Made by a program: the position numbers and the translations under genes
Assembly: GCF_006345805.1 (NCBI RefSeq)
Contig: NC_043016.1
Span: 25,048,001 to 25,112,000 of the forward strand
Length of the DNA stretch: 64,000 bases
Direction: 5' to 3'
DNA from: Octopus sinensis
Lineage: Eukaryota
The notes under the pieces: generated by a model
What the model saw: only the letters and a program-made list of their open reading frames with translations
The model's database searches: none
Told to the model about the DNA's origin: nothing
Part shown: positions 7,481 to 61,244 of the stretch, one piece after another
How the letters are laid out: each line of letters begins with the position of its first letter
Numbering within the stretch: the stretch's first letter is position 1

Positions 7481-8019
7481 AATTCTTTTAGCATCTAATT
7501 TCCCCCCTACACATGCTCACCACACACACGCATCACAAGCCAACAAAGAAGCCTCTGTATGGTCATTAAAACTGCTAGAAACAACTATGAAATCTTCCTC
7601 GAATTACACTCTACTAACTTAGGAAAGGAACAGAATTTTTAAATAATGCTATCCTAGGTACCCAAAATGAAGGTAGACTGGTCACAGCTGAAATTGTATT
7701 GATCATAGATTTGCCAAATCAAGGTTTACTTGGGGCTAAACAACATCAACTAATTTACCAATGTTAGCAATAGTCAGAAAAGTGTACAGTACAAAATTCC
7801 TTTACACAACTTACACCTTTGTACTGACTCATCAGTAATAGCCAGCATGTATGTTAATTTGTGTGCGTGTGTGTGTAGGGACATAGCTTAGTGTTGCACT
7901 CATGATTGTATGATTGTGATTTCAATTCCTTGACCAGGCAATGTGCTGCTCTTGAGCAAAACACTTCATGTAACTCCAGTTCATTCAGCTTCCTAGCCTT
8001 GGTTTAGGAAGGATCTTTG

Positions 8020-8031
8020 AGATATATATAC

Positions 8032-8078
<47 letters not shown>

Positions 8079-8081
8079 TAC

Positions 8082-8134
<53 letters not shown>

Positions 8135-8239
8135 CACACACACACACACATATATACACACACACACACACATATATACACACACACACATACATATACA
8201 CACACACACACATACATACACACACACACACACATACAT

Positions 8240-8308
<69 letters not shown>

Positions 8309-8581
8309 TATACACACACACATATACACACACATACATATACACACACACACACATATACACACACATATATACACACACATACACACATACATATATA
8401 CACACACACATACATATATACACACACACATACATATATACACACACATACATATATACACACACACACATACATATATACACACACACATACATATATA
8501 CACACACACACACATATATACACACACACACACACACATACATATACACACACACACACATACACACACACACATACATAT

Positions 8582-8614
<33 letters not shown>

Positions 8615-8785
8615 TATATACACACACATACACACATACATATATACACACACACATACACATACACACATACATATATACACACACATACACACATACA
8701 CACACATACACATACATATATACACACACATACACATATACACACACATACACATATACACACACATACACATATACACACACAT

Positions 8786-8822
<37 letters not shown>
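8020..8822. repeat. About 800-bp compound (CA)n/(TA)n/(TACA)n microsatellite
   Basis: Directly visible. It produces the spurious 275-286 aa ORFs in the track. Confidence 0.97.
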
Positions 8823-8823
<1 letters not shown>

Positions 8824-8958
8824 TTTATCATTAAAGCTGCAAAAACATCGCAAAAGATGCAGTTTTAATGATAAAGCATATTTCTCTACCTTCAGTACTT
8901 GAGTACTATTTTTGCCTACCTTGTTTCACATTTGTGCTTACTCAAGTGTATGTATGTG

Positions 8959-31344: not shown

Positions 31345-33098
31345 TGTGTGTGTGTGTGTGTGTGTACAAATGCCGATCTCTAACTGTGGAAGGAACCTGG
31401 GAATGAGGTAGACCCAGGAAGACATGGGAGAAGGTGATGAAGCATGATCTTTGAACACTGGGCCTCATGGAGGAAATGACAAGTGACTGTGACCTTTGGT
31501 GATATGCCATGCTTGAGAAAACCTGTCAAGCCAAGTGAAATCACAATTATGGCCAATGCTGTGTTGTGTAACTGGTGCTCATGCCGTGACATATAAAAAG
31601 TACCCTTCAAATGTTGGCCGATATTTTATGCTTGAGAAGACCCATCAAGCCAAGTGAAATTGTAATTGTGGTCAAAGCCAGTGTCACATATCTGGCACCT
31701 GTGCCAGTGGCATGTACAAAGCACCCTCCAAGTTTTGGGCCTTATCAAGACAGTGACAAGTGGACAAGACTTTTGGCAATATACTGTGTTTGAGAAGAAC
31801 TGCCATGCCGGTACTTTGTAACAGGCACCCATGCCAGTGGCACGTAAAAAGCATCCACAACACTGTTGGAGTGATTTGGTGTTAGGAAAGGCATCCATGC
31901 TTTAGGAACCATGCCAAATCAGATTGAAAACTGGTGCAGCTCTCCAGCTTACCAGTTTTCAGTCAAGCCGTCCAACCCATACCAGCATGAAAAAAAAAAG
32001 GGCGTTAAATGATGGTGGTGGTGGTGGTGGTGGTGGTGATAATAGTGATGATGATGATGATGAGGAGGAGGAGGATATACATATGATAATACATTATAAC
32101 TAAAAGGCTCCAATTTCCAATATTCAGAGTTGCTTGTTTCTGATCATCAGTTGATAAACCAAGCTTCATTTTCTTTTGAATATCCACTGTCTGAATATTT
32201 TTTTGAAATACGAAATGAAAGTTTGAAGGAAGCTCTTATCATTACCTTTATTCATTTAAAAATCTTTGTGAATGACATGTGCAAAAACGACTGCTTCAGG
32301 CTCATACTTTTGATTTCATTTCTGCTTCTCATTTATTACAAACATCATAAACTCTATAGAAGCAAAGTCATGAAATTGCATTGCTTTGTCAGCAACATTC
32401 CAAAATAATACTTTTAAGGAATACTTTTAATTGTTGTTTTTAAAAACAATGAATGTATATGCCGGTGTATATACACGTGCACACACACACACACACAAAC
32501 GCAGAGGCACATTCACATTAAAACATATATGAATAAAGCTTATTATACATTTCAAACACTGTTTTTTTTTTTGAACCAGAACAAAATTCAAGGAGGTTTT
32601 AAATTTTTAATTTCATAAAAGATACTTGGCCTTGTGCTTACAAGGCATTAACAACTCATTTCTTTTATTCAACCTATTGGTGCTTTGAGTCAAAATTCTC
32701 AGTTTTTTGCTCAATCAAAAATCACACCACATCTATGATTTGAAGCTCCCATCCCTGTAAGGTTGTACTTTAGCTAAGATAGACCAGCTAATTTTGAATT
32801 CATGAGGACTTGTCTCACACAAGAACCATAGTTTTTCCAAAGCTGTACTAAATTCTCTGTTAGAGCTAACAAATCAATGTTTCTGCTTGTAATGACAGAT
32901 TTTGAATGTGTGTTCTGTTGCCCCAATATATGTTTTAGGTTTCAAAAAATATTCAGGCAGTGGATATTTAAAAGAAAATCAGGTTTGGTTTAATACCTAA
33001 TAATGAAAAAACCAGCAACCATCAGTCACTAGTCATTGCCTCTGTGAAACCCAAAGTTCAAAGATCATGCTCCACCGCCTCATCCCATATATACCATT

Positions 33099-41950: not shown

Positions 41951-42447
41951 TATTTTGTATTTTATGTGTAGATGTATATATATAGATGTACATGTAATAT
42001 GTACACATATATATACACATATATACATGCACTAGCCCTATGACCTAGCAACGACGGGTCATAATGCTAGTATATATATATATATATTAATATTTCGCTT
42101 AGGCATAGTGAGACAACAACTTGGTATAGACCTCAGTATACATATGGTCCAGAACACAATGCTGTATGAGTATAGAGTGGTAATAGAAACAAAGAAATGA
42201 CACAGGGAAAAAAAACTGTTATGTAATGAACATCATTAGCTTACAGTTGTTTCTTCTATAAGATGTTATCCTACTCGTCAGTTAAGAGGTCTACCACATC
42301 CTATAGCAGAAATAGGTGTAAGCTTAAAATTTAATCACATAACATTTGGTCTTTCCAGTGTCATCTCTTTATTTTCTATATCCTATCTATAGATATATAT
42401 ATATATATATTATATATATATATATATTATATAATATATATATATAT

Positions 42448-49224: not shown

Positions 49225-49899
49225 CAGTAGTTTTATTTTTATAGTGTGCTTTCACTTCACTACCGAGCGCAGCTCTGTGTGCCTTAGGTATGTGCTGTGA
49301 TTTGTTGTGATGCTCCGATGGTTATTGTATGGAAAGTGTTCTGCGTAGGATGTGTGCAGTGCCTAGTAGTGCAATTTTCTGTATGTTATATGTGTTTGTA
49401 AGTCCTGGTGTTTTTGTTACGTATTTGTCTGAATATTTTTTTATCATGCCTAATGCACCTACTATGATAGGAATTGTTTCTGTTTTTAGATTCCACATTC
49501 TGGTTACCTCTATTTCCAGGTCTTTGTATTTTGAAAGTTTCTCCATTTCTTTTAGAGACACGTTGTCATCTGCCGGTATTGATACATCAATTAGAAAGCA
49601 TTTTTTTCTTCATGATCTCTGACAACTATATCTGGTCTGTTGGCCTTAATTTCTCTATCTGTGTGTATCGGCATATCCCAGAGTATAGTTGCTTTCTCGT
49701 TCTCTGTGACCTTTTCTGGTGTGTGCCTGTACCATCTTTTTTCTGTTGTTATTCCATAATGTTGGCATAGCTTCCAGTGTATGTAGGTTCCAACTCTGTC
49801 GTGTCTGTGAATATATTCCTTCTTAGCCAGGACTAGGCAGCCAGAGATAATATGATTTATTGTTTCTTGTCCATCTCCACACATTCTGCAGTTACTTGT
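49225..49899 (-). mobile_element. R4/Dong-like non-LTR retrotransposon 3' end, copy A (CCHC knuckle plus REL endonuclease)
   Basis: CRMC...HIISGC...RHDRVGTYIHW, ILWD..I.TD..I.ANRPDIVV, KLSKYKDL, IVGALG, ALLGTAHILRR. Confidence 0.9.
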
Positions 49900-50007
49900 T
49901 AACTGCAGAATATGTGGAGAACAATGTGTCCAATTCTTCCAATCATCATCATCATCATCATCATCATCGTTTAACGTCCACAAATATTATTATTATTATT
50001 ATTATTA

Positions 50008-50912
50008 CTTTTTCTTTCTTCTTTCAAATTTGCTTCCATTTCTTGCCGAGTGTCTTCCCGACTCCTAGGGCAAAGAAACTCATAGTATACATTGGTAGGC
50101 CATTAAACCAAACTCAATAGTTCGTTCATTTAAAAAAGATTTTTTTTTTTAAGTTAAATTAAAATACATGAGCAGCAACAGTTCTCACATCGACAATGCT
50201 CTTCTCAATACGTGTGATGTACCAGTTAAGACAACCTTTTGCACTTCTTGCAGGGATGGTAAGCCAGGGTTCATTCTCATATAATTTTCGGTTCCCTTCT
50301 TGATCATTCCTAGTGCTCCTACGATCACTGGTATTGTAACCGCCTTGAGATGCCACATTTTCTCAATTTCAATGAGTAGGTCTTTATATTTTCTGAGCTT
50401 GTCAAACTCTTTCGCTGAGATATTATGATCACAGGGGATGCTCATGTCGATCAATAAGCAAACTTTATTGTTTTGGTCTTTCACAACAATATCTGGTTTA
50501 TTGGCCTTGATGGTTCGGTCTGTATGTACTGGAAAGTCCCACAGAATGGTTACATTTTCTCCTTCAGTTACAGCCTCAGGGTGGTGATTATACCACTTGT
50601 CGGCAGTTTTGATATTGTAATGCCAACTTATTAGCCAGTGTAGATATTGGCCAACTCTGTCATGTCTTAATTTATACTCCACTGGTGCTAAGACTTTACA
50701 TCCAGAGATTAGGTGGTCCACTGTTTCAATCATGTCGTTGCAGAATCAGCATTTTGGGTCTGCTCCATTTTTCATCACATTGGCCTGGTAGTTCCGGGTT
50801 AATAGGCTTTGATCTTGAGCAGCCAGGATGAAACCTTCGCTCTCTGCTTTTAGCCCTGAGCTCCATAGCCACTGATGGGTTTGCTTCTGGTCAACATCAG
50901 CTTGTTTGCTGC
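50008..50912 (-). mobile_element. R4/Dong-like non-LTR retrotransposon 3' end, copy B
   Basis: LAAQDQSLLTRNY, HLISGC, RHDRVG, KPDIVV, KYKDL, IVGALG. The 3'UTR ends in (AAT)n. Confidence 0.9.
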
Positions 50913-56094: not shown

Positions 56095-56970
56095 GGACTA
56101 TTGACAGTTAAGTGTATTGGTTATGGACACAGTACAGTGGACTATATCACACTGTGGTACCTACTTATAGACTGGATTGTTGGCAGTTAAGTGAGATTGT
56201 CATAGATACAGTACAGTGAACTATACTTCACTGTGGTACCTACTTACAGCTAGGTAGACTGGACTGTTGACAGTTAAGTGAGTTGGTCATGGACACAATA
56301 TAGTGAACTTTACTACACAATGGTACCTACTTACAGCTAGGTAGACTGGGCTGTTGACAGTTAAGTGTGGTGGTCATGGACAGAGTACAGTGAACTATAC
56401 TTCACTGTGGTACCTACTTACAGCTAGGTAGACTGGACTGTTGACAGTTAAGTGAGTTGGTCATGGACCCAATATAGTGAACTTTACTACACAATGGTAC
56501 CTACTTACAGCTAGGTAGACTGGGCTGTTGACAGTTAAGTGTGGTGGTCATAGACACAATATAGTGAACTATACTTCACTGTAGTACCTACTTACAGCTA
56601 GGTAGACTGGGCTGTTGACAGTTAAGTGAGTTGGTCATGGACACAATATAGTGAACTTTACTACACAATGGTACGTACTTACAGCTAGGTAGACTGGGCT
56701 GTTGACAGTCAAGTGTGTTGGTCATGAACAGAGTACAGTGAACTATACTACACTGTGGTACCTACATACAGCTAGGTAGACTGGACTGCTGACAGTTGAA
56801 TATGTTGGTCATGGACAAAGTATAGTGAACTATACCACACTGTGGTACCTACTTACAACTAGGTACACTGGACTGTTGACAGTCAAGTGTGTTGGTCATG
56901 GACAGAGTACAGTGATCTATACCACACTGTGTGCTTATTTACAACTACATGGTCTATGATGCTGTTGACA
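56095..56970. repeat. Tandem repeat, 87-bp unit, about 10 copies
   Basis: Unit starts at 56175, 56262, 56349, 56436, 56523, 56610, 56697, 56784 and 56871 (period 87). The consensus unit has stop codons in all six frames. Confidence 0.95.
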
Positions 56971-57423: not shown

Positions 57424-57482
<59 letters not shown>

Positions 57483-57757
57483 CCATATCTGTGTAGTTAA
57501 GAAGTTTCGTTTGCAACCACATTGTTCTTAGTTTGATATCTTACACTAAGCAGTATTTTAAGGGAATGTCTTCTGTTATAACCTCATGATTGACTACTAT
57601 CTTATCAGCAGAATTTGCTAGGTGGAAACTGTGTGGAAGTTATTTGAAACACACACACACATATATATATATATCTACACATACATACATACATACATAC
57701 ATACATACATACATACATACATACATACATAAATACATACATACATACATACATACA

Positions 57758-57791
<34 letters not shown>

Positions 57792-58017
57792 CATATATAT
57801 ATATATAATGTGAAATAGAAAGATGAATAATCTTGTAGTAGATTAATCAAAAGTTTAACCGATACCTTAGTAGCAAAAATCACAGCAGTAAACAGCACGG
57901 TTGGAGGTACAACCATCTGGCGTTGCAACCGTGCGTTGGTGCGGATAATTGAAATTAAAACATTATTGGTGAATTGAAGAAATGGAGCTGAACGCAGATT
58001 GAACAGAAATCGTTTTA

Positions 58018-58107
58018 TTTCATTCTACACGTGTTTCGAAAGGCACAAAAAAACCAAAATCCGATTGAATAATGGGACCATATTGTGTTTTTCTCTTCAG
58101 GAAGAAA
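58018..58107 (-). ncRNA. Type I hammerhead ribozyme motif, left arm
   Basis: Mirror image of 59773-59862, with one extra helix II mismatch at 58089. Confidence 0.72.
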
Positions 58108-58701
58108 AAAGGAAATCTGTTGGAAAAACAAAAACAGAACAGAGGCGGAGCAAAAACAAATCGAACTACGCTCCTAAGAGCCCATGGCGAAACTGTTTAT
58201 CAGTGTATGTTGAGAACCGGTGGCTGAAGAATTCAACGGGCCAGGCATCGGTCAATCATGTGGGTGAGGGCGTATAGATGTTCTTAGTGACCGAGAATAA
58301 AGTTCTGACTATTTAAGGAATATTGGATGTTTTATAAGGGGCGAGAAAAAAAACCTACTTAGAGACGTGTGTGTGTGTATACTGTTCTATATATGTGTGT
58401 GTTGGCGTAGGGGTAGAAAACATTTTTTGTGTACGTGTGTGCGTTTGATCGTTCGGCTGTCAGTGGCTACTGCCGAGAGAACCGTTGGGTGGCAGAAAGA
58501 AAAAAATATATATATATTATGTTTTATGTGTGTGTGTGTTCATCTAAGCCTGCCTTGTCAAGGAAACCCCCCGCTGTGAAAAAACCAAGCCCCGTTTGTC
58601 TTACAGGAGTAATTCCCCTTGCAGTGGTTAATCGTAGATATCTTAAAGGCTATTTCAGAATTGTTACCAAGGGCTATGGGTGCCGGTATTATTTATAAAC
58701 G

Positions 58702-58967
58702 CTATTTAAAAGCCAGATAAGTGTAACGCCGCCAATGGGGGCATCGAAAAGCCGACTGTAAGAGCCCGTTTACCATCCGGCCTCTGGCAAACAAAATATG
58801 GAAGAGTTCGGAGACACAAAGGTTGCACTGTCTTCTGCCCCTATCAAATGGGAGGGCCACCGACAAAATTGACCATTCCAGCCTATAGCTTAAGTTCGTA
58901 TCCTTCAGTCGCCATATTAGCTTACTGAGTCCTGTGGTCTGGCGCTTGTTCATGTCCCGAAAAGTTG
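58702..58967 (-). pseudogene. Penelope-like GIY-YIG endonuclease C-terminal remnant, left copy (includes the spacer)
   Basis: TFRDMNKRQTTGLSKLIWRLKDTNLSYRLEWSIL...CNLCVSELFHIL...CPHWRRY fits the PLE pattern T.LSK.IW.LK....W.I....C.LC..E...CRH. Confidence 0.8.
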
Positions 58968-59179
58968 GGCGACTGAAGGATACGAACTTAAGCTATAGGC
59001 TGGAATGGTCAATTTTGTCGGTGGCCCTCCCATTTGATAGGGGCAGAAGACAGTGCAACCTTTGTGTCTCCGAACTCTTCCATATTTTGTTTGCCAGAGG
59101 CCGGATGGTAAACGGGCTCTTACAGTCGGCTTTTCGATGCCCCCATTGGCGGCGTTACACTTATCTGGCTTTTAAATAG
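58968..59179 (+). pseudogene. Penelope-like GIY-YIG endonuclease C-terminal remnant, right copy
   Basis: Identical peptide from RLKDTNLSY to the stop codon. Confidence 0.8.
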
Positions 59180-59772
59180 CGTTTATAAATAATACCGGCA
59201 CCCATAGCCCTTGGTAACAAATTCTGAAATAGCTTTAAGATATCTACGATTAACCACTGCAAGGGGAATTACTCCTGTAAGACAAACGGGGCTTGGTTTT
59301 TTCACAGCGGGGGGTTTCCTTGACAAGGCAGGCTTAGATGAACACACACACACATAAAACATAATATATATATATTTTTTTCTTTCTGCCACCCAACGGT
59401 TCTCTCGGCAGTAGCCACTGACAGCCGAACGATCAAACGCACACACGTACACAAAAAATGTTTTCTACCCCTACGCCAACACACACATATATAGAACAGT
59501 ATACACACACACACGTCTCTAAGTAGGTTTTTTTCTCGCCCCTTATAAAACATCCAATATTCCTTAAATAGTCAGAACTTTATTCTCGGTCACTAAGAAC
59601 ATCTATACGCCCTCACCCACATGATTGACCGATGCCTGACCCATTGAATTCTTCAGCCACCGGTTCTCAACATACACTGATAAACAGTTTCGCCATGGGC
59701 TCTTAGGAGCGTAGTTCGATTTGTTTTTGCTCCGCCTCTGTTCTGTTTTTGTTTTTCCAACGGATTTCCTTT

Positions 59773-59862
59773 TTTCTTCCTGAAGAGAAAGACACAATAT
59801 GGTCCCATTATTCAATCGGATTTTGGTTTTTTTGTGCCTTTCGAAACACGTGTAGAATGAAA
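59773..59862 (+). ncRNA. Type I hammerhead ribozyme motif, right arm
   Basis: CTGAAGA at 59780-59786. Helix II gaaagacacaa/ttgtgcctttc. GAAA at 59843-59846. Palindromic helix III acacgtgt. GUA ends at 59854. Helix I tttcttc/gaa(t)gaaa. Confidence 0.8.
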
Positions 59863-59915
59863 TAAAACGATTTCTGTTCAATCTGCGTTCAGCTCCATTT
59901 CTTCAATTCACCAAT

Positions 59916-59983
<68 letters not shown>

Positions 59984-60144
59984 CATAAATGAGGGCAAAG
60001 GAAAAAATTTCTAATGCCAAATATGCCGAAAAATTGGACATATTGTCCATTAACCATATAATTTTAAGGTATTTTTTAATATGCTGGCCATTGATAAAAT
60101 TTTTTTCGAAAAAATATTTTTTCGAAAGAAATTTTATCCTCATT

Positions 60145-60185
<41 letters not shown>

Positions 60186-61244
60186 CACACACACACACAC
60201 ACACAATGACCCCGAACCCACAAGAGTAAACAAGAGAGACGGAGACAGGCAGAAAGAAGGAAAATTCCACTTATTCTTTTAAAAAACACAATATTCTTTT
60301 AAAAAATTTTCTTTTAATTTTTCCAAAATTTAATTGTTTTCCATACTTACAGTTGAAAAAGTCTCAAAGACTGAAACCAGTACTGAAATGTTTGTTATAA
60401 AATTATTTTAGCATTTTATATCTTGACTTTTTTTCCCATATATATATATTAGCTGATGTACCCAGTAATTCCTGGGAAAGCAGGGCTTATCCCTTAGTTC
60501 TGTTCTCATAATTGTTTTGCTAATCCAATAACAACAGTACAAAGTATGTAGCCCTTAAAACGGTTTTTGTGCATTTACAGAGAACAGGGAACTGTCTTAC
60601 ACAGGATCTTGTTTTTAGGAATTCCCAATAAGTTATGAATACCCAAGTTATGAAGTCAGTTATGTAATAACATGAAATTAGTTACCCAATAGTAAGAATT
60701 CAAATAAAGTAGCCCTGAAAAGGGCTTTAATGTGTTCCCAGAGTATATAGAACTTAAGAGGAAATGCTAATAAGGTATTTATACTAAAAATCATGAAGCA
60801 TGTTACATAATAACAGGTTAATCAGATATTAGACAATAACAATTCAAAGTAAATAACTCTGAAAAGGGCTTTTGTGCGTTCCCAGAGAATATTACCCTCA
60901 GCAGCAATAGTGTTGGTATATTTATGAATAAGTCACTCACTGAAATAAGTGGATCTATTGTTTAGGAAAATACTATTTACATGTTTAAGGGTTGTACTGG
61001 ATAAATTGTGGAAATAACTCTAAGAGTTCAAATACTAAGAAATAAGCATACTCAATTTGATTTATACCAAATGATTTAGGAAAATGAATGGATTATTTCC
61101 CTTGGCTGTTAAAAGGAAATATATTAGATATATATCAGGATACCTTCCAAGGGCCCTATTATCGATTTTTTTTCAACAATCTGAGTTTGCCATGAGGTTT
61201 CCAGACATGAGTTCTATTCAAATGTCAAGTTTCATCAAAATCAA

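What the first reader, a model, noticed from the sequence alone, without database searches (positions are those of the whole stretch)
57808..59924. 1.97-kb near-perfect palindrome made from a Penelope-like retroelement end, embedded in TA microsatellite
Seen: arms 57956-58913 and 58968-59924. I count 4 transitions and three 1-nt indels (about 99% identity), with all substitutions in the outer 300 bp. The 54-bp spacer continues the minus-strand GIY-YIG frame (TFRDMNKRQTTGLSKLIW), so the left copy is longer by 54 nt at its 5' end and about 148 nt at its 3' end, and the right copy is its inverted duplicate. The right end stops directly at (TA)n. CpGs are well retained. Established: Penelope-like elements carry pseudo-LTRs that can be inverted in truncated copies. 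Inference: a young insertion made by fold-back or template switching, able to form a cruciform or about 950 bp of dsRNA.
Basis: partly seen in the sequence, partly recalled or inferred. Interest (0 to 1): 0.88.

Follow-up and report, generated by a model that had tools for sequence, protein, structure and literature searches.

The report
Head-to-head Penelope-like retroelement insertion
The 2-kb palindrome is real: two 5'-truncated copies of a Hydra-clade Penelope-like retrotransposon lie head-to-head in a TA microsatellite, which is a clean, young example of an insertion form already described for this element class.

Summary
The arms are 57956-58913 and 58968-59924, with 4 transitions, three 1-nt homopolymer indels and a 54-nt spacer. 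A 148-nt extension sits on the left only, and (TA)29 abuts the right arm.

The minus-strand peptide is the last 87 codons of a Penelope-like element (PLE) ORF. It aligns to the C-terminus of about 700-aa RT+GIY-YIG proteins (hhalign 98%, E 1.4e-13). Those proteins carry every motif published for the Hydra clade: RWK, DKT, CxCX5C, and CxxC/CxH around E and N. That clade is reported to insert into (TA)n.

Each arm also carries a type-I hammerhead-ribozyme motif 601 nt after the stop codon. The nearest related lineage shares its unusually long helix II.

The right arm ends at a terminus conserved in that lineage. The left copy runs 148 nt further, which matches the one-sided PLE "tail".

CpG o/e is 0.9-1.1 in the insert and 0.1-0.2 in the flanks, so the insertion is young.

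Head-to-head inverted, 5'-truncated copies with a tail on one side are a published PLE hallmark. This is a new family member of a known kind, not a new phenomenon. Fold-back self-priming and two-strand priming cannot be told apart here. Read-level confirmation was not possible.

The parts
57679..57808 (.). Left target flank: (ACAT)32 running into (AT)n
   Evidence: TRF and the sequence itself.
57809..57955 (-). 148-nt 3' extension ('tail') present only on the left copy. It contains a hairpin and an ATG at 57916 that opens a frame running to the element end.
   Evidence: It is unique in the window. CpG o/e is 1.13, like the arms and unlike the flanks. The RNA fold has z = -2.56. The ORF is listed. 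It has no homology to the N-termini of relatives.
57956..58913 (-). Left arm: the 3' part of the PLE copy, sense on the minus strand
58020..58106 (-). Type-I hammerhead-ribozyme motif of the left copy. It reads CUGAAGA, a 56-nt helix II, GAAA, C-ACGU-G, then UA, with predicted cleavage between 58026 and 58025.
   Evidence: Rfam Hammerhead_1 aligns end to end at 14.9 bits, which is sub-threshold. The pattern and the generic descriptor are unique to the two arms. The same architecture occurs in L083 and L001.
58702..58965 (-). Last 87 codons plus the stop codon of the PLE ORF (C-terminal half of the GIY-YIG endonuclease: CxxC, E, N, CxH)
58914..58967 (-). 54-nt spacer, which is 54 further nt of the left copy's ORF
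58968..59924 (+). Right arm: inverted copy of the same 3' part, sense on the plus strand. It carries the endonuclease remnant at 58970-59179.
59774..59860 (+). Hammerhead motif of the right copy, with predicted cleavage after 59854. The arm ends 70 nt further on.
   Evidence: The helix II variant with G at 59791 pairs better, and helix II appears in the minimum-free-energy fold.
59923..59980 (.). Right target flank: (TA)29

Best explanation
This is one recent retrotransposition event of a Hydra-clade Penelope-like element (RT plus C-terminal GIY-YIG endonuclease) into a compound (ACAT)n(TA)n microsatellite. The event left two 5'-truncated copies joined head-to-head. Each copy keeps the end of the endonuclease ORF, a 601-nt 3' region, a hammerhead-ribozyme motif and the sequence beyond it. 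The right copy ends at the lineage's usual 3' terminus, 70 nt past the ribozyme cleavage site. The left copy ends 148 nt further on, which is the optional PLE 'tail'.

Shown: the anatomy, the family assignment, the TA target, the youth of the insert and the conserved terminus.

Inferred: how the inversion arose. There are two sub-models of roughly equal weight. (i) The first cDNA, primed from the left DNA end, folded back 54 nt from its tip and copied itself, and the endonuclease resolved the intermediate at the tail boundary. (ii) Both cleaved DNA strands primed cDNA synthesis, one from each of two RT start sites, and one cDNA then switched template onto the other.
For: Family: phmmer finds 1473 relatives, and 125 of the best 150 carry CxxC..E..N..CxH. 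The window peptide aligns without gaps, keeps all invariant residues, and stops where the relatives stop. hhalign against 20 full-length relatives gives 98% probability and E 1.4e-13. Their consensus has RWK, ADKT, YRDDG, CxCX5C, a VIY..YIG (GIY-YIG) motif pair, CxxC-E, N and CxH, which is the motif list published for the Hydra clade (PMC8557442 section 11). Pfam GIY-YIG passes its cut-off in P0207 and P0151. An AlphaFold model (pLDDT 89) has TERT as its best PDB match, E 8.8e-9.

Target: (TA)n lies on both sides. Relatives also abut (TA)n.

Ribozyme.

Termini: L083, from the nearest lineage, ends 10-25 nt after the same TCCATTTCT motif as the right arm. In the metagenomic relatives, the distance from the ribozyme to (TA)n falls into two classes, 31-63 nt and 103-112 nt.

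Architecture in relatives: tandem units occur, inverted 5'-truncated fragments lie at 5' ends (L043, L062, L073), and L058 has a 50-nt fold-back with a 5-nt spacer.

Literature: inverted 5'-truncated copies and a one-sided tail are described (PMC8557442, PMC3846280). A PLE protein cleaves and extends both strands and uses two RT start sites that delimit the tail (PMC11167929).

Youth: CpG o/e values and 0.4% arm divergence, with 2 of the 4 changes at CpG sites.
Against: No second copy of this family could be found, so its consensus, its true 3' ends and the status of the 148 nt as element sequence rest on CpG content and analogy. The hammerhead scores below Rfam's threshold, and its cleavage activity is untested. 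The 601-nt gap between stop codon and ribozyme and the 148-nt tail are both longer than in relatives (140-250 nt, and about 65-70 nt implied) and longer than published tails (30-40 bp). Neither sub-model explains both the close 5' ends (54 nt apart) and the unequal 3' ends without an extra assumption. The fold search of the endonuclease domain alone was not significant; the top hit was Hpy188I at E 0.63. No reads were available to exclude misassembly.
Confidence: 0.8

Rival explanations
1. Assembly artefact: fold-back chimeric long reads or a mis-join created a palindrome that is absent from the genome.
For: The three indels sit in homopolymers, as long-read consensus errors do. PLE tandem and inverted structures are known to trouble assemblies (PMC8557442, PMC3846280). 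No reads were available.
Against: The arms differ by 4 transitions, two of them at CpG sites. The structure is asymmetric, with 148 nt on one side only. The arms stop at element ends and at (TA)n rather than carrying flank sequence into the repeat. The two flanks are different unique sequences. The right arm ends at a terminus conserved in an unrelated sample.
Confidence: 0.06
2. DNA-level inverted duplication after insertion: a single 5'-truncated PLE copy was later duplicated in inverted orientation by replication template switching or hairpin-capped break repair, without reverse transcriptase.
For: A short spacer (54 nt) and near-identical arms are typical of fold-back inversions (my own knowledge). 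A 1-2 nt TA microhomology lies at the right junction.
Against: The duplicated segment would have to begin inside the ORF and end exactly at the lineage's normal 3' terminus, without including any flank. Head-to-head pairs with a tail on one side are produced routinely by PLE integration (PMC3846280). Relatives show the same kinds of junction.
Confidence: 0.1
3. Two independent insertions of the same family into the same microsatellite in opposite orientations.
For: (TA)n is a preferred target, so repeated hits are expected. A second TA-flanked small element sits just to the right.
Against: No TA repeat or other target sequence separates the two copies, because the spacer is ORF sequence. The two 5' ends are only 54 nt apart. 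The arms are 99.6% identical in substitutions.
Confidence: 0.03

Closest known systems
Hydra clade of Penelope-like elements (Craig, Yushenova, Rodriguez and Arkhipova 2021, PMC8557442)
   Same: The endonuclease is a C-terminal GIY-YIG with CxxC and CxH around the catalytic E and N. Relatives carry RWK, DKT and the CxCX5C linker. Insertion is into (TA)n. A hammerhead motif lies downstream of the ORF. The hosts are aquatic invertebrates.
   Different: The window copy is only the last 87 codons plus the 3' region, so the RT, the linker and the GIY/YIG motifs cannot be seen. The nearest proteins are at most 49% identical. The 3' region (601 nt to the ribozyme) and helix II of the ribozyme (56 nt) are much longer than in the roughly 2.4-kb metagenomic relatives.
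Inverted pLTR structures with a one-sided 'tail' in Penelope/Poseidon elements (Arkhipova et al. 2013, PMC3846280; Frangieh et al. 2024, PMC11167929)
   Same: The copies are 5'-truncated and arranged head-to-head. The extension is on only one of the two inverted ends. The pLTR reaches past the ribozyme towards or into the ORF start.
   Different: The tail here is 148 nt rather than 30-40 bp. Both copies are severely truncated, so the whole insert is one palindrome rather than a full element with an inverted pLTR. The clade is different.
LINE-1 twin-priming inversions (Ostertag and Kazazian 2001; my own knowledge, not checked here)
   Same: A second priming event on the other DNA strand during target-primed reverse transcription yields an inverted segment.
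   Different: Twin priming joins different parts of one RNA, giving an inversion and not a palindrome. Here both arms copy the same part of the element.
Long inverted-repeat (hairpin RNA) loci that feed small-RNA pathways (my own knowledge)
   Same: About 950 bp of near-perfect self-complementarity; the central 454 nt fold at -429 kcal/mol.
   Different: There is no evidence of transcription across the locus. Both copies point outward, so a hairpin transcript needs an outside or antisense promoter.

Membership tests
Penelope-like elements, Hydra clade | C-terminal GIY-YIG endonuclease with the conserved E and N | tested here: met
   The window peptide aligns to columns 620-704 of 718-aa relatives and keeps the invariant E and N. 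Pfam GIY-YIG scores above its cut-off in relatives P0207 and P0151. The GIY and YIG motifs themselves are lost through 5' truncation.
Penelope-like elements, Hydra clade | CxxC and CxH motifs on either side of E and N | tested here: met
   The peptide reads CNLCVSE...VNG...CPH. All of these residues are invariant in alignments A1 and A3.
Penelope-like elements, Hydra clade | Linker with CxCX5C and no internal CCHH | not testable with these tools
   The linker lies upstream of the truncation point. The proteins the peptide aligns with do have it, as CNCRxxxxC.
Penelope-like elements, Hydra clade | TERT-like RT with RWK and DKT motifs | not testable with these tools
   The RT is absent from the window copy. 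The relatives have RWK, ADKT and YRDDG, and their model's best PDB match is TERT at E 8.8e-9.
Penelope-like elements, Hydra clade | Insertion into (TA)n | tested here: met
   (AT)n lies at 57790-57808 and (TA)29 at 59923-59980. Relatives do the same.
Penelope-like elements, Hydra clade | Hammerhead ribozyme motif in the pLTR region | tested here: met
   All core nucleotides, helices I-III and the palindromic loop III are present. The descriptor matches only the two arms, against 0.01 matches expected per shuffled window. The architecture is shared with L083 and L001. Caveats: the Rfam score of 14.9 bits is below the cut-off of 34; Rfam also misses textbook copies in relatives; activity is untested.
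Penelope-like elements (general) | 5' truncation, tandem or inverted copies, optional tail at one end | tested here: met
   The two copies are head-to-head and the 148-nt extension is on the left only. These features are described in PMC8557442 and PMC3846280.
GIY-YIG nuclease superfamily | GIY-YIG fold of the endonuclease domain | tested here: inconclusive
   The domain model has pLDDT 86.6. The top PDB match is Hpy188I, which I know to be a GIY-YIG restriction enzyme, but at E 0.63 and probability 0.16.

The most novel reading that the evidence does not exclude
The palindrome may preserve, in one young locus, both alternative 3' termini of a PLE: 70 nt and 218 nt past the ribozyme cleavage site. 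That would make it a genomic footprint of symmetric, two-strand target-primed reverse transcription by a dimeric RT-endonuclease. It would also show a tail 4-5 times longer than any described, possibly containing the start of the element's ORF.
Probability: 0.3. Interest if true: 0.45.

Novelty: new member of a known kind. Interest (0 to 1): 0.25.

Why it matters
This is a tidy natural specimen for an open mechanistic question: how Penelope-like elements make inverted copies, and why only one end carries a tail. The insert is young and barely mutated. It has clear ends in a simple target and carries the ribozyme on both arms. A genome-wide census of this family could help separate fold-back self-priming from two-strand priming. 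For genome annotation it is a warning that such palindromes are real insertions, that they may be unstable, and that they could yield hairpin RNA if transcribed through. It does not reveal a new kind of element.

Tried and rejected
- The 87-aa peptide alone gave nothing in Pfam, in the word-indexed protein search or in PDB sequences. Only the exhaustive phmmer search found relatives.
- Exact-sequence look-ups of four window ORFs found no public contig. The source genome and other copies of the family were therefore out of reach.
- blastn of the element against the window found only the two arms.
- Rfam scans of the region found no significant hammerhead. Rfam also failed on relatives with textbook hammerheads, so I used a motif descriptor instead.
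- Profiles A1 and A2 gave no meaningful PDB sequence hits.
- The frame opened by the ATG in the tail has no detectable similarity to the N-termini of relatives.
- The endonuclease-domain fold search was not significant.
- Host identification from a LINE ORF was ambiguous: Penaeus, Octopus and Exaiptasia all gave hits at 57-73% identity.
- A second hammerhead-like pattern at 42242-42281 has no helix I and is probably chance.
- L001 has GAGAC in place of GAAAC, so it is a decayed ribozyme.
- Two independent insertions was rejected because no target sequence lies between the copies.

Full report
**Observation.** The inverted repeat is present as described.
- A gapped alignment gives arms 57956-58913 and 58968-59924 with 956 aligned columns.
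- There are four mismatches, all transitions, all 134-286 nt from the outer ends.
- There are three 1-nt indels, all in homopolymers.
- The 54-nt spacer (58914-58967) continues the minus-strand reading frame, so it belongs to the left copy.
- The left copy has 148 extra nt (57809-57955) next to an (ACAT)32/(AT)n tract. The right arm runs straight into (TA)29.
- CpG observed/expected is 0.91 in each arm and 1.13 in the 148 nt. It is 0.10 and 0.20 in the flanks and 0.38 for the window.
- The window holds no other copy of the element.

**What the coding remnant is.** Pfam, a word-indexed search and PDB sequences gave nothing for the 87-aa peptide.
- An exhaustive phmmer search found 1473 relatives. 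Of the best 150, 125 carry CxxC..E..N..CxH. All eight of those at least 250 aa long have a CxC..C linker upstream (CxCX5C in seven, X7 in one). Four also show an RT YRDD-type box.
- The window peptide aligns without gaps, keeps every invariant residue, and ends at the family's natural stop.
- Full-length relatives of about 700 aa have a consensus with RWK, ADKT, YRDDG, CNCRxxxxCPL, a VIY..YIG (GIY-YIG) motif pair, CxLCxxEK, LNKR and CxH. This is the motif list published for the Hydra clade of Penelope-like elements. The same paper reports that almost all Hydra families insert into (TA)n (PMC8557442, section 11).
- hhalign of that profile against the window peptide gives 98% probability and E 1.4e-13 over columns 620-704.
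- Pfam GIY-YIG passes its cut-off in two relatives.
- An AlphaFold model of a relative (pLDDT 89.3) has telomerase TERT as its best PDB match (E 8.8e-9), followed by other reverse transcriptases. This fits the known PLE-TERT kinship.
- A model of the endonuclease domain alone gave only a non-significant top hit, Hpy188I at E 0.63. I know Hpy188I to be a GIY-YIG enzyme.

**Architecture of relatives.** I fetched 80 metagenomic loci.
- They show tandem units of about 2.4-2.5 kb, inverted 5'-truncated fragments next to 5' ends (L043, L062, L073), and in L058 a 50-nt fold-back with a 5-nt spacer.
- Many carry textbook type-I hammerheads 140-250 nt after the stop codon: CUGANGA, helix II, GAAA, C, a 4-6-nt palindromic loop, G, then UA. 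Rfam misses these even in E-value mode.
- Where the copies meet (TA)n, the distance from the ribozyme cleavage site falls into two classes: 31-63 nt in 11 loci and 103-112 nt in 3 loci.

**Ribozyme in the window.** Each arm has CUGAAGA, a 56-nt helix II, GAAA, C-ACGU-G, then UA. The coordinates are 58100-58026 on the minus strand and 59780-59854 on the plus strand.
- Rfam Hammerhead_1 aligns to it end to end, but at only 14.9 bits.
- A pattern search found only these two sites, and 0 of 100 shuffles had any match. That pattern was partly shaped by the sequence itself.
- A generic descriptor built from the relatives' features, apart from a longer allowed helix II, also matches only these two sites. 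It expects 0.01 matches per shuffled window.
- The long helix II is not special pleading. L083 and L001 come from the protein lineage closest to the window element (45-49% identity). They have the same layout, with a helix II of about 50 nt and a 4-nt palindromic loop (AUAU). Their helix I pairs through different bases.

**The two 3' ends.** The right arm ends 70 nt past the predicted cleavage site, and the left copy ends 218 nt past it.
- L083 ends, at a (TATC)n tract, 10-25 nt after the same TCCATTTCT motif that precedes the right arm's end. The right arm therefore ends at a terminus conserved in the lineage, not at a random break.
- The extra 148 nt match the PLE "tail", an extension found on only one of two inverted pLTRs (PMC3846280). 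That tail has been attributed to two RT start sites (PMC11167929) or to endonuclease resolution of the intermediate (PMC8557442).
- The tail is CpG-rich like the arms and folds into a moderately stable hairpin, z = -2.56.
- An ATG at 57916, 109 nt after the cleavage site, opens a frame that runs to the element end. This recalls pLTRs that include the first ORF codons (PMC3846280), and the spacing matches relatives (about 100-155 nt). It has no detectable homology, so this point is inference only.

**Age.** Four substitutions in 956 nt, two of them CpG to TpG, and retained CpGs against strongly depleted flanks indicate a recent insertion. All four substitutions lie in the outer 286 nt (post hoc p about 0.008). 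This remains unexplained.

**Mechanism.** The anatomy fits a single PLE integration into (TA)n.
- Fold-back self-priming explains why the 5' ends lie only 54 nt apart. It is favoured in PMC3846280 and is seen in L058.
- Two-strand priming from two start sites explains the unequal but canonical 3' ends, and has biochemical support (PMC11167929).
- Each model needs one extra assumption, so I weight them about equally.
- Both copies point outward from the centre. The self-complementarity itself is not in doubt: the central 454 nt fold at -429 kcal/mol.

**Rivals.**
- Misassembly is unlikely because of the arm differences, the asymmetry, the element-defined boundaries and the distinct flanks. It cannot be excluded without reads.
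- A later DNA-level inverted duplication would have to end by coincidence at the conserved terminus.
- Two separate insertions are excluded because no target sequence lies between the copies.

**Verdict.** The structure is a new family member showing a known hallmark of Penelope-like elements. Its interest is modest: it is a clean specimen for studying how these elements integrate.

**Limits.** The source genome is not in the searchable collections. The host remains undetermined; it is a microsatellite-rich invertebrate whose LINE relatives occur in Penaeus and Octopus. No family consensus could be built.

Noticed in passing
window 32616-32942 (minus strand): An old, stop-riddled endonuclease fragment of a different Hydra-type PLE family (YIGATEHTFK...LNKRNELLMPCKHKAKYLL). 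This element clade therefore has a long history in this genome.
   Followed up: partly
window 49591-50733 (minus strand): Two ORFs (130 and 182 aa) that look like LINE reverse-transcriptase C-terminal regions. I searched the 182-aa ORF; its named relatives are in Penaeus indicus and P. chinensis, Octopus sinensis and Exaiptasia at 57-73% identity, so the host was not identified.
   Followed up: partly
window 56095-56931: A tandem repeat with an 87-nt unit (about 9 copies) and a 174-nt higher-order period, about 900 bp left of the palindrome. It has no hammerhead motif.
   Followed up: no
window 59981-60146: A 166-nt unit with weak terminal inverted repeats (AATGAGG core) sits between (TA)29 and (AT)16(AC)12. 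It may be a small TA-targeting MITE in the same microsatellite. It is single-copy in the window.
   Followed up: partly
window 42242-42281 (minus strand): The pattern CTGACGA...GAAAC...GTA resembles a hammerhead core, but helix I does not pair. Chance expectation is 0.09 per window, so it is probably chance.
   Followed up: partly
loci L003-L082 (metagenome contigs): Hydra-clade PLEs are abundant in marine metagenome assemblies, as tandem units of about 2.4-2.5 kb. Their 3' ends at (TA)n fall into two classes, 31-63 nt and 103-112 nt past the ribozyme. This suggests two alternative termini in that sub-lineage too.
   Followed up: partly
loci L048, L050, L053, L058, L061 and others: Rfam hammerhead models fail to report clear minimal hammerheads of this clade, both at the gathering threshold and in E-value mode. 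Rfam-based annotation would therefore undercount PLE ribozymes.
   Followed up: yes
window-wide, for example 7985-8868, 57424-57479 and 60147-60205: Compound (CA)n, (TA)n and (ACAT)n microsatellites are very dense. Window CpG o/e is 0.38, which points to a methylated, repeat-rich invertebrate genome.
   Followed up: no
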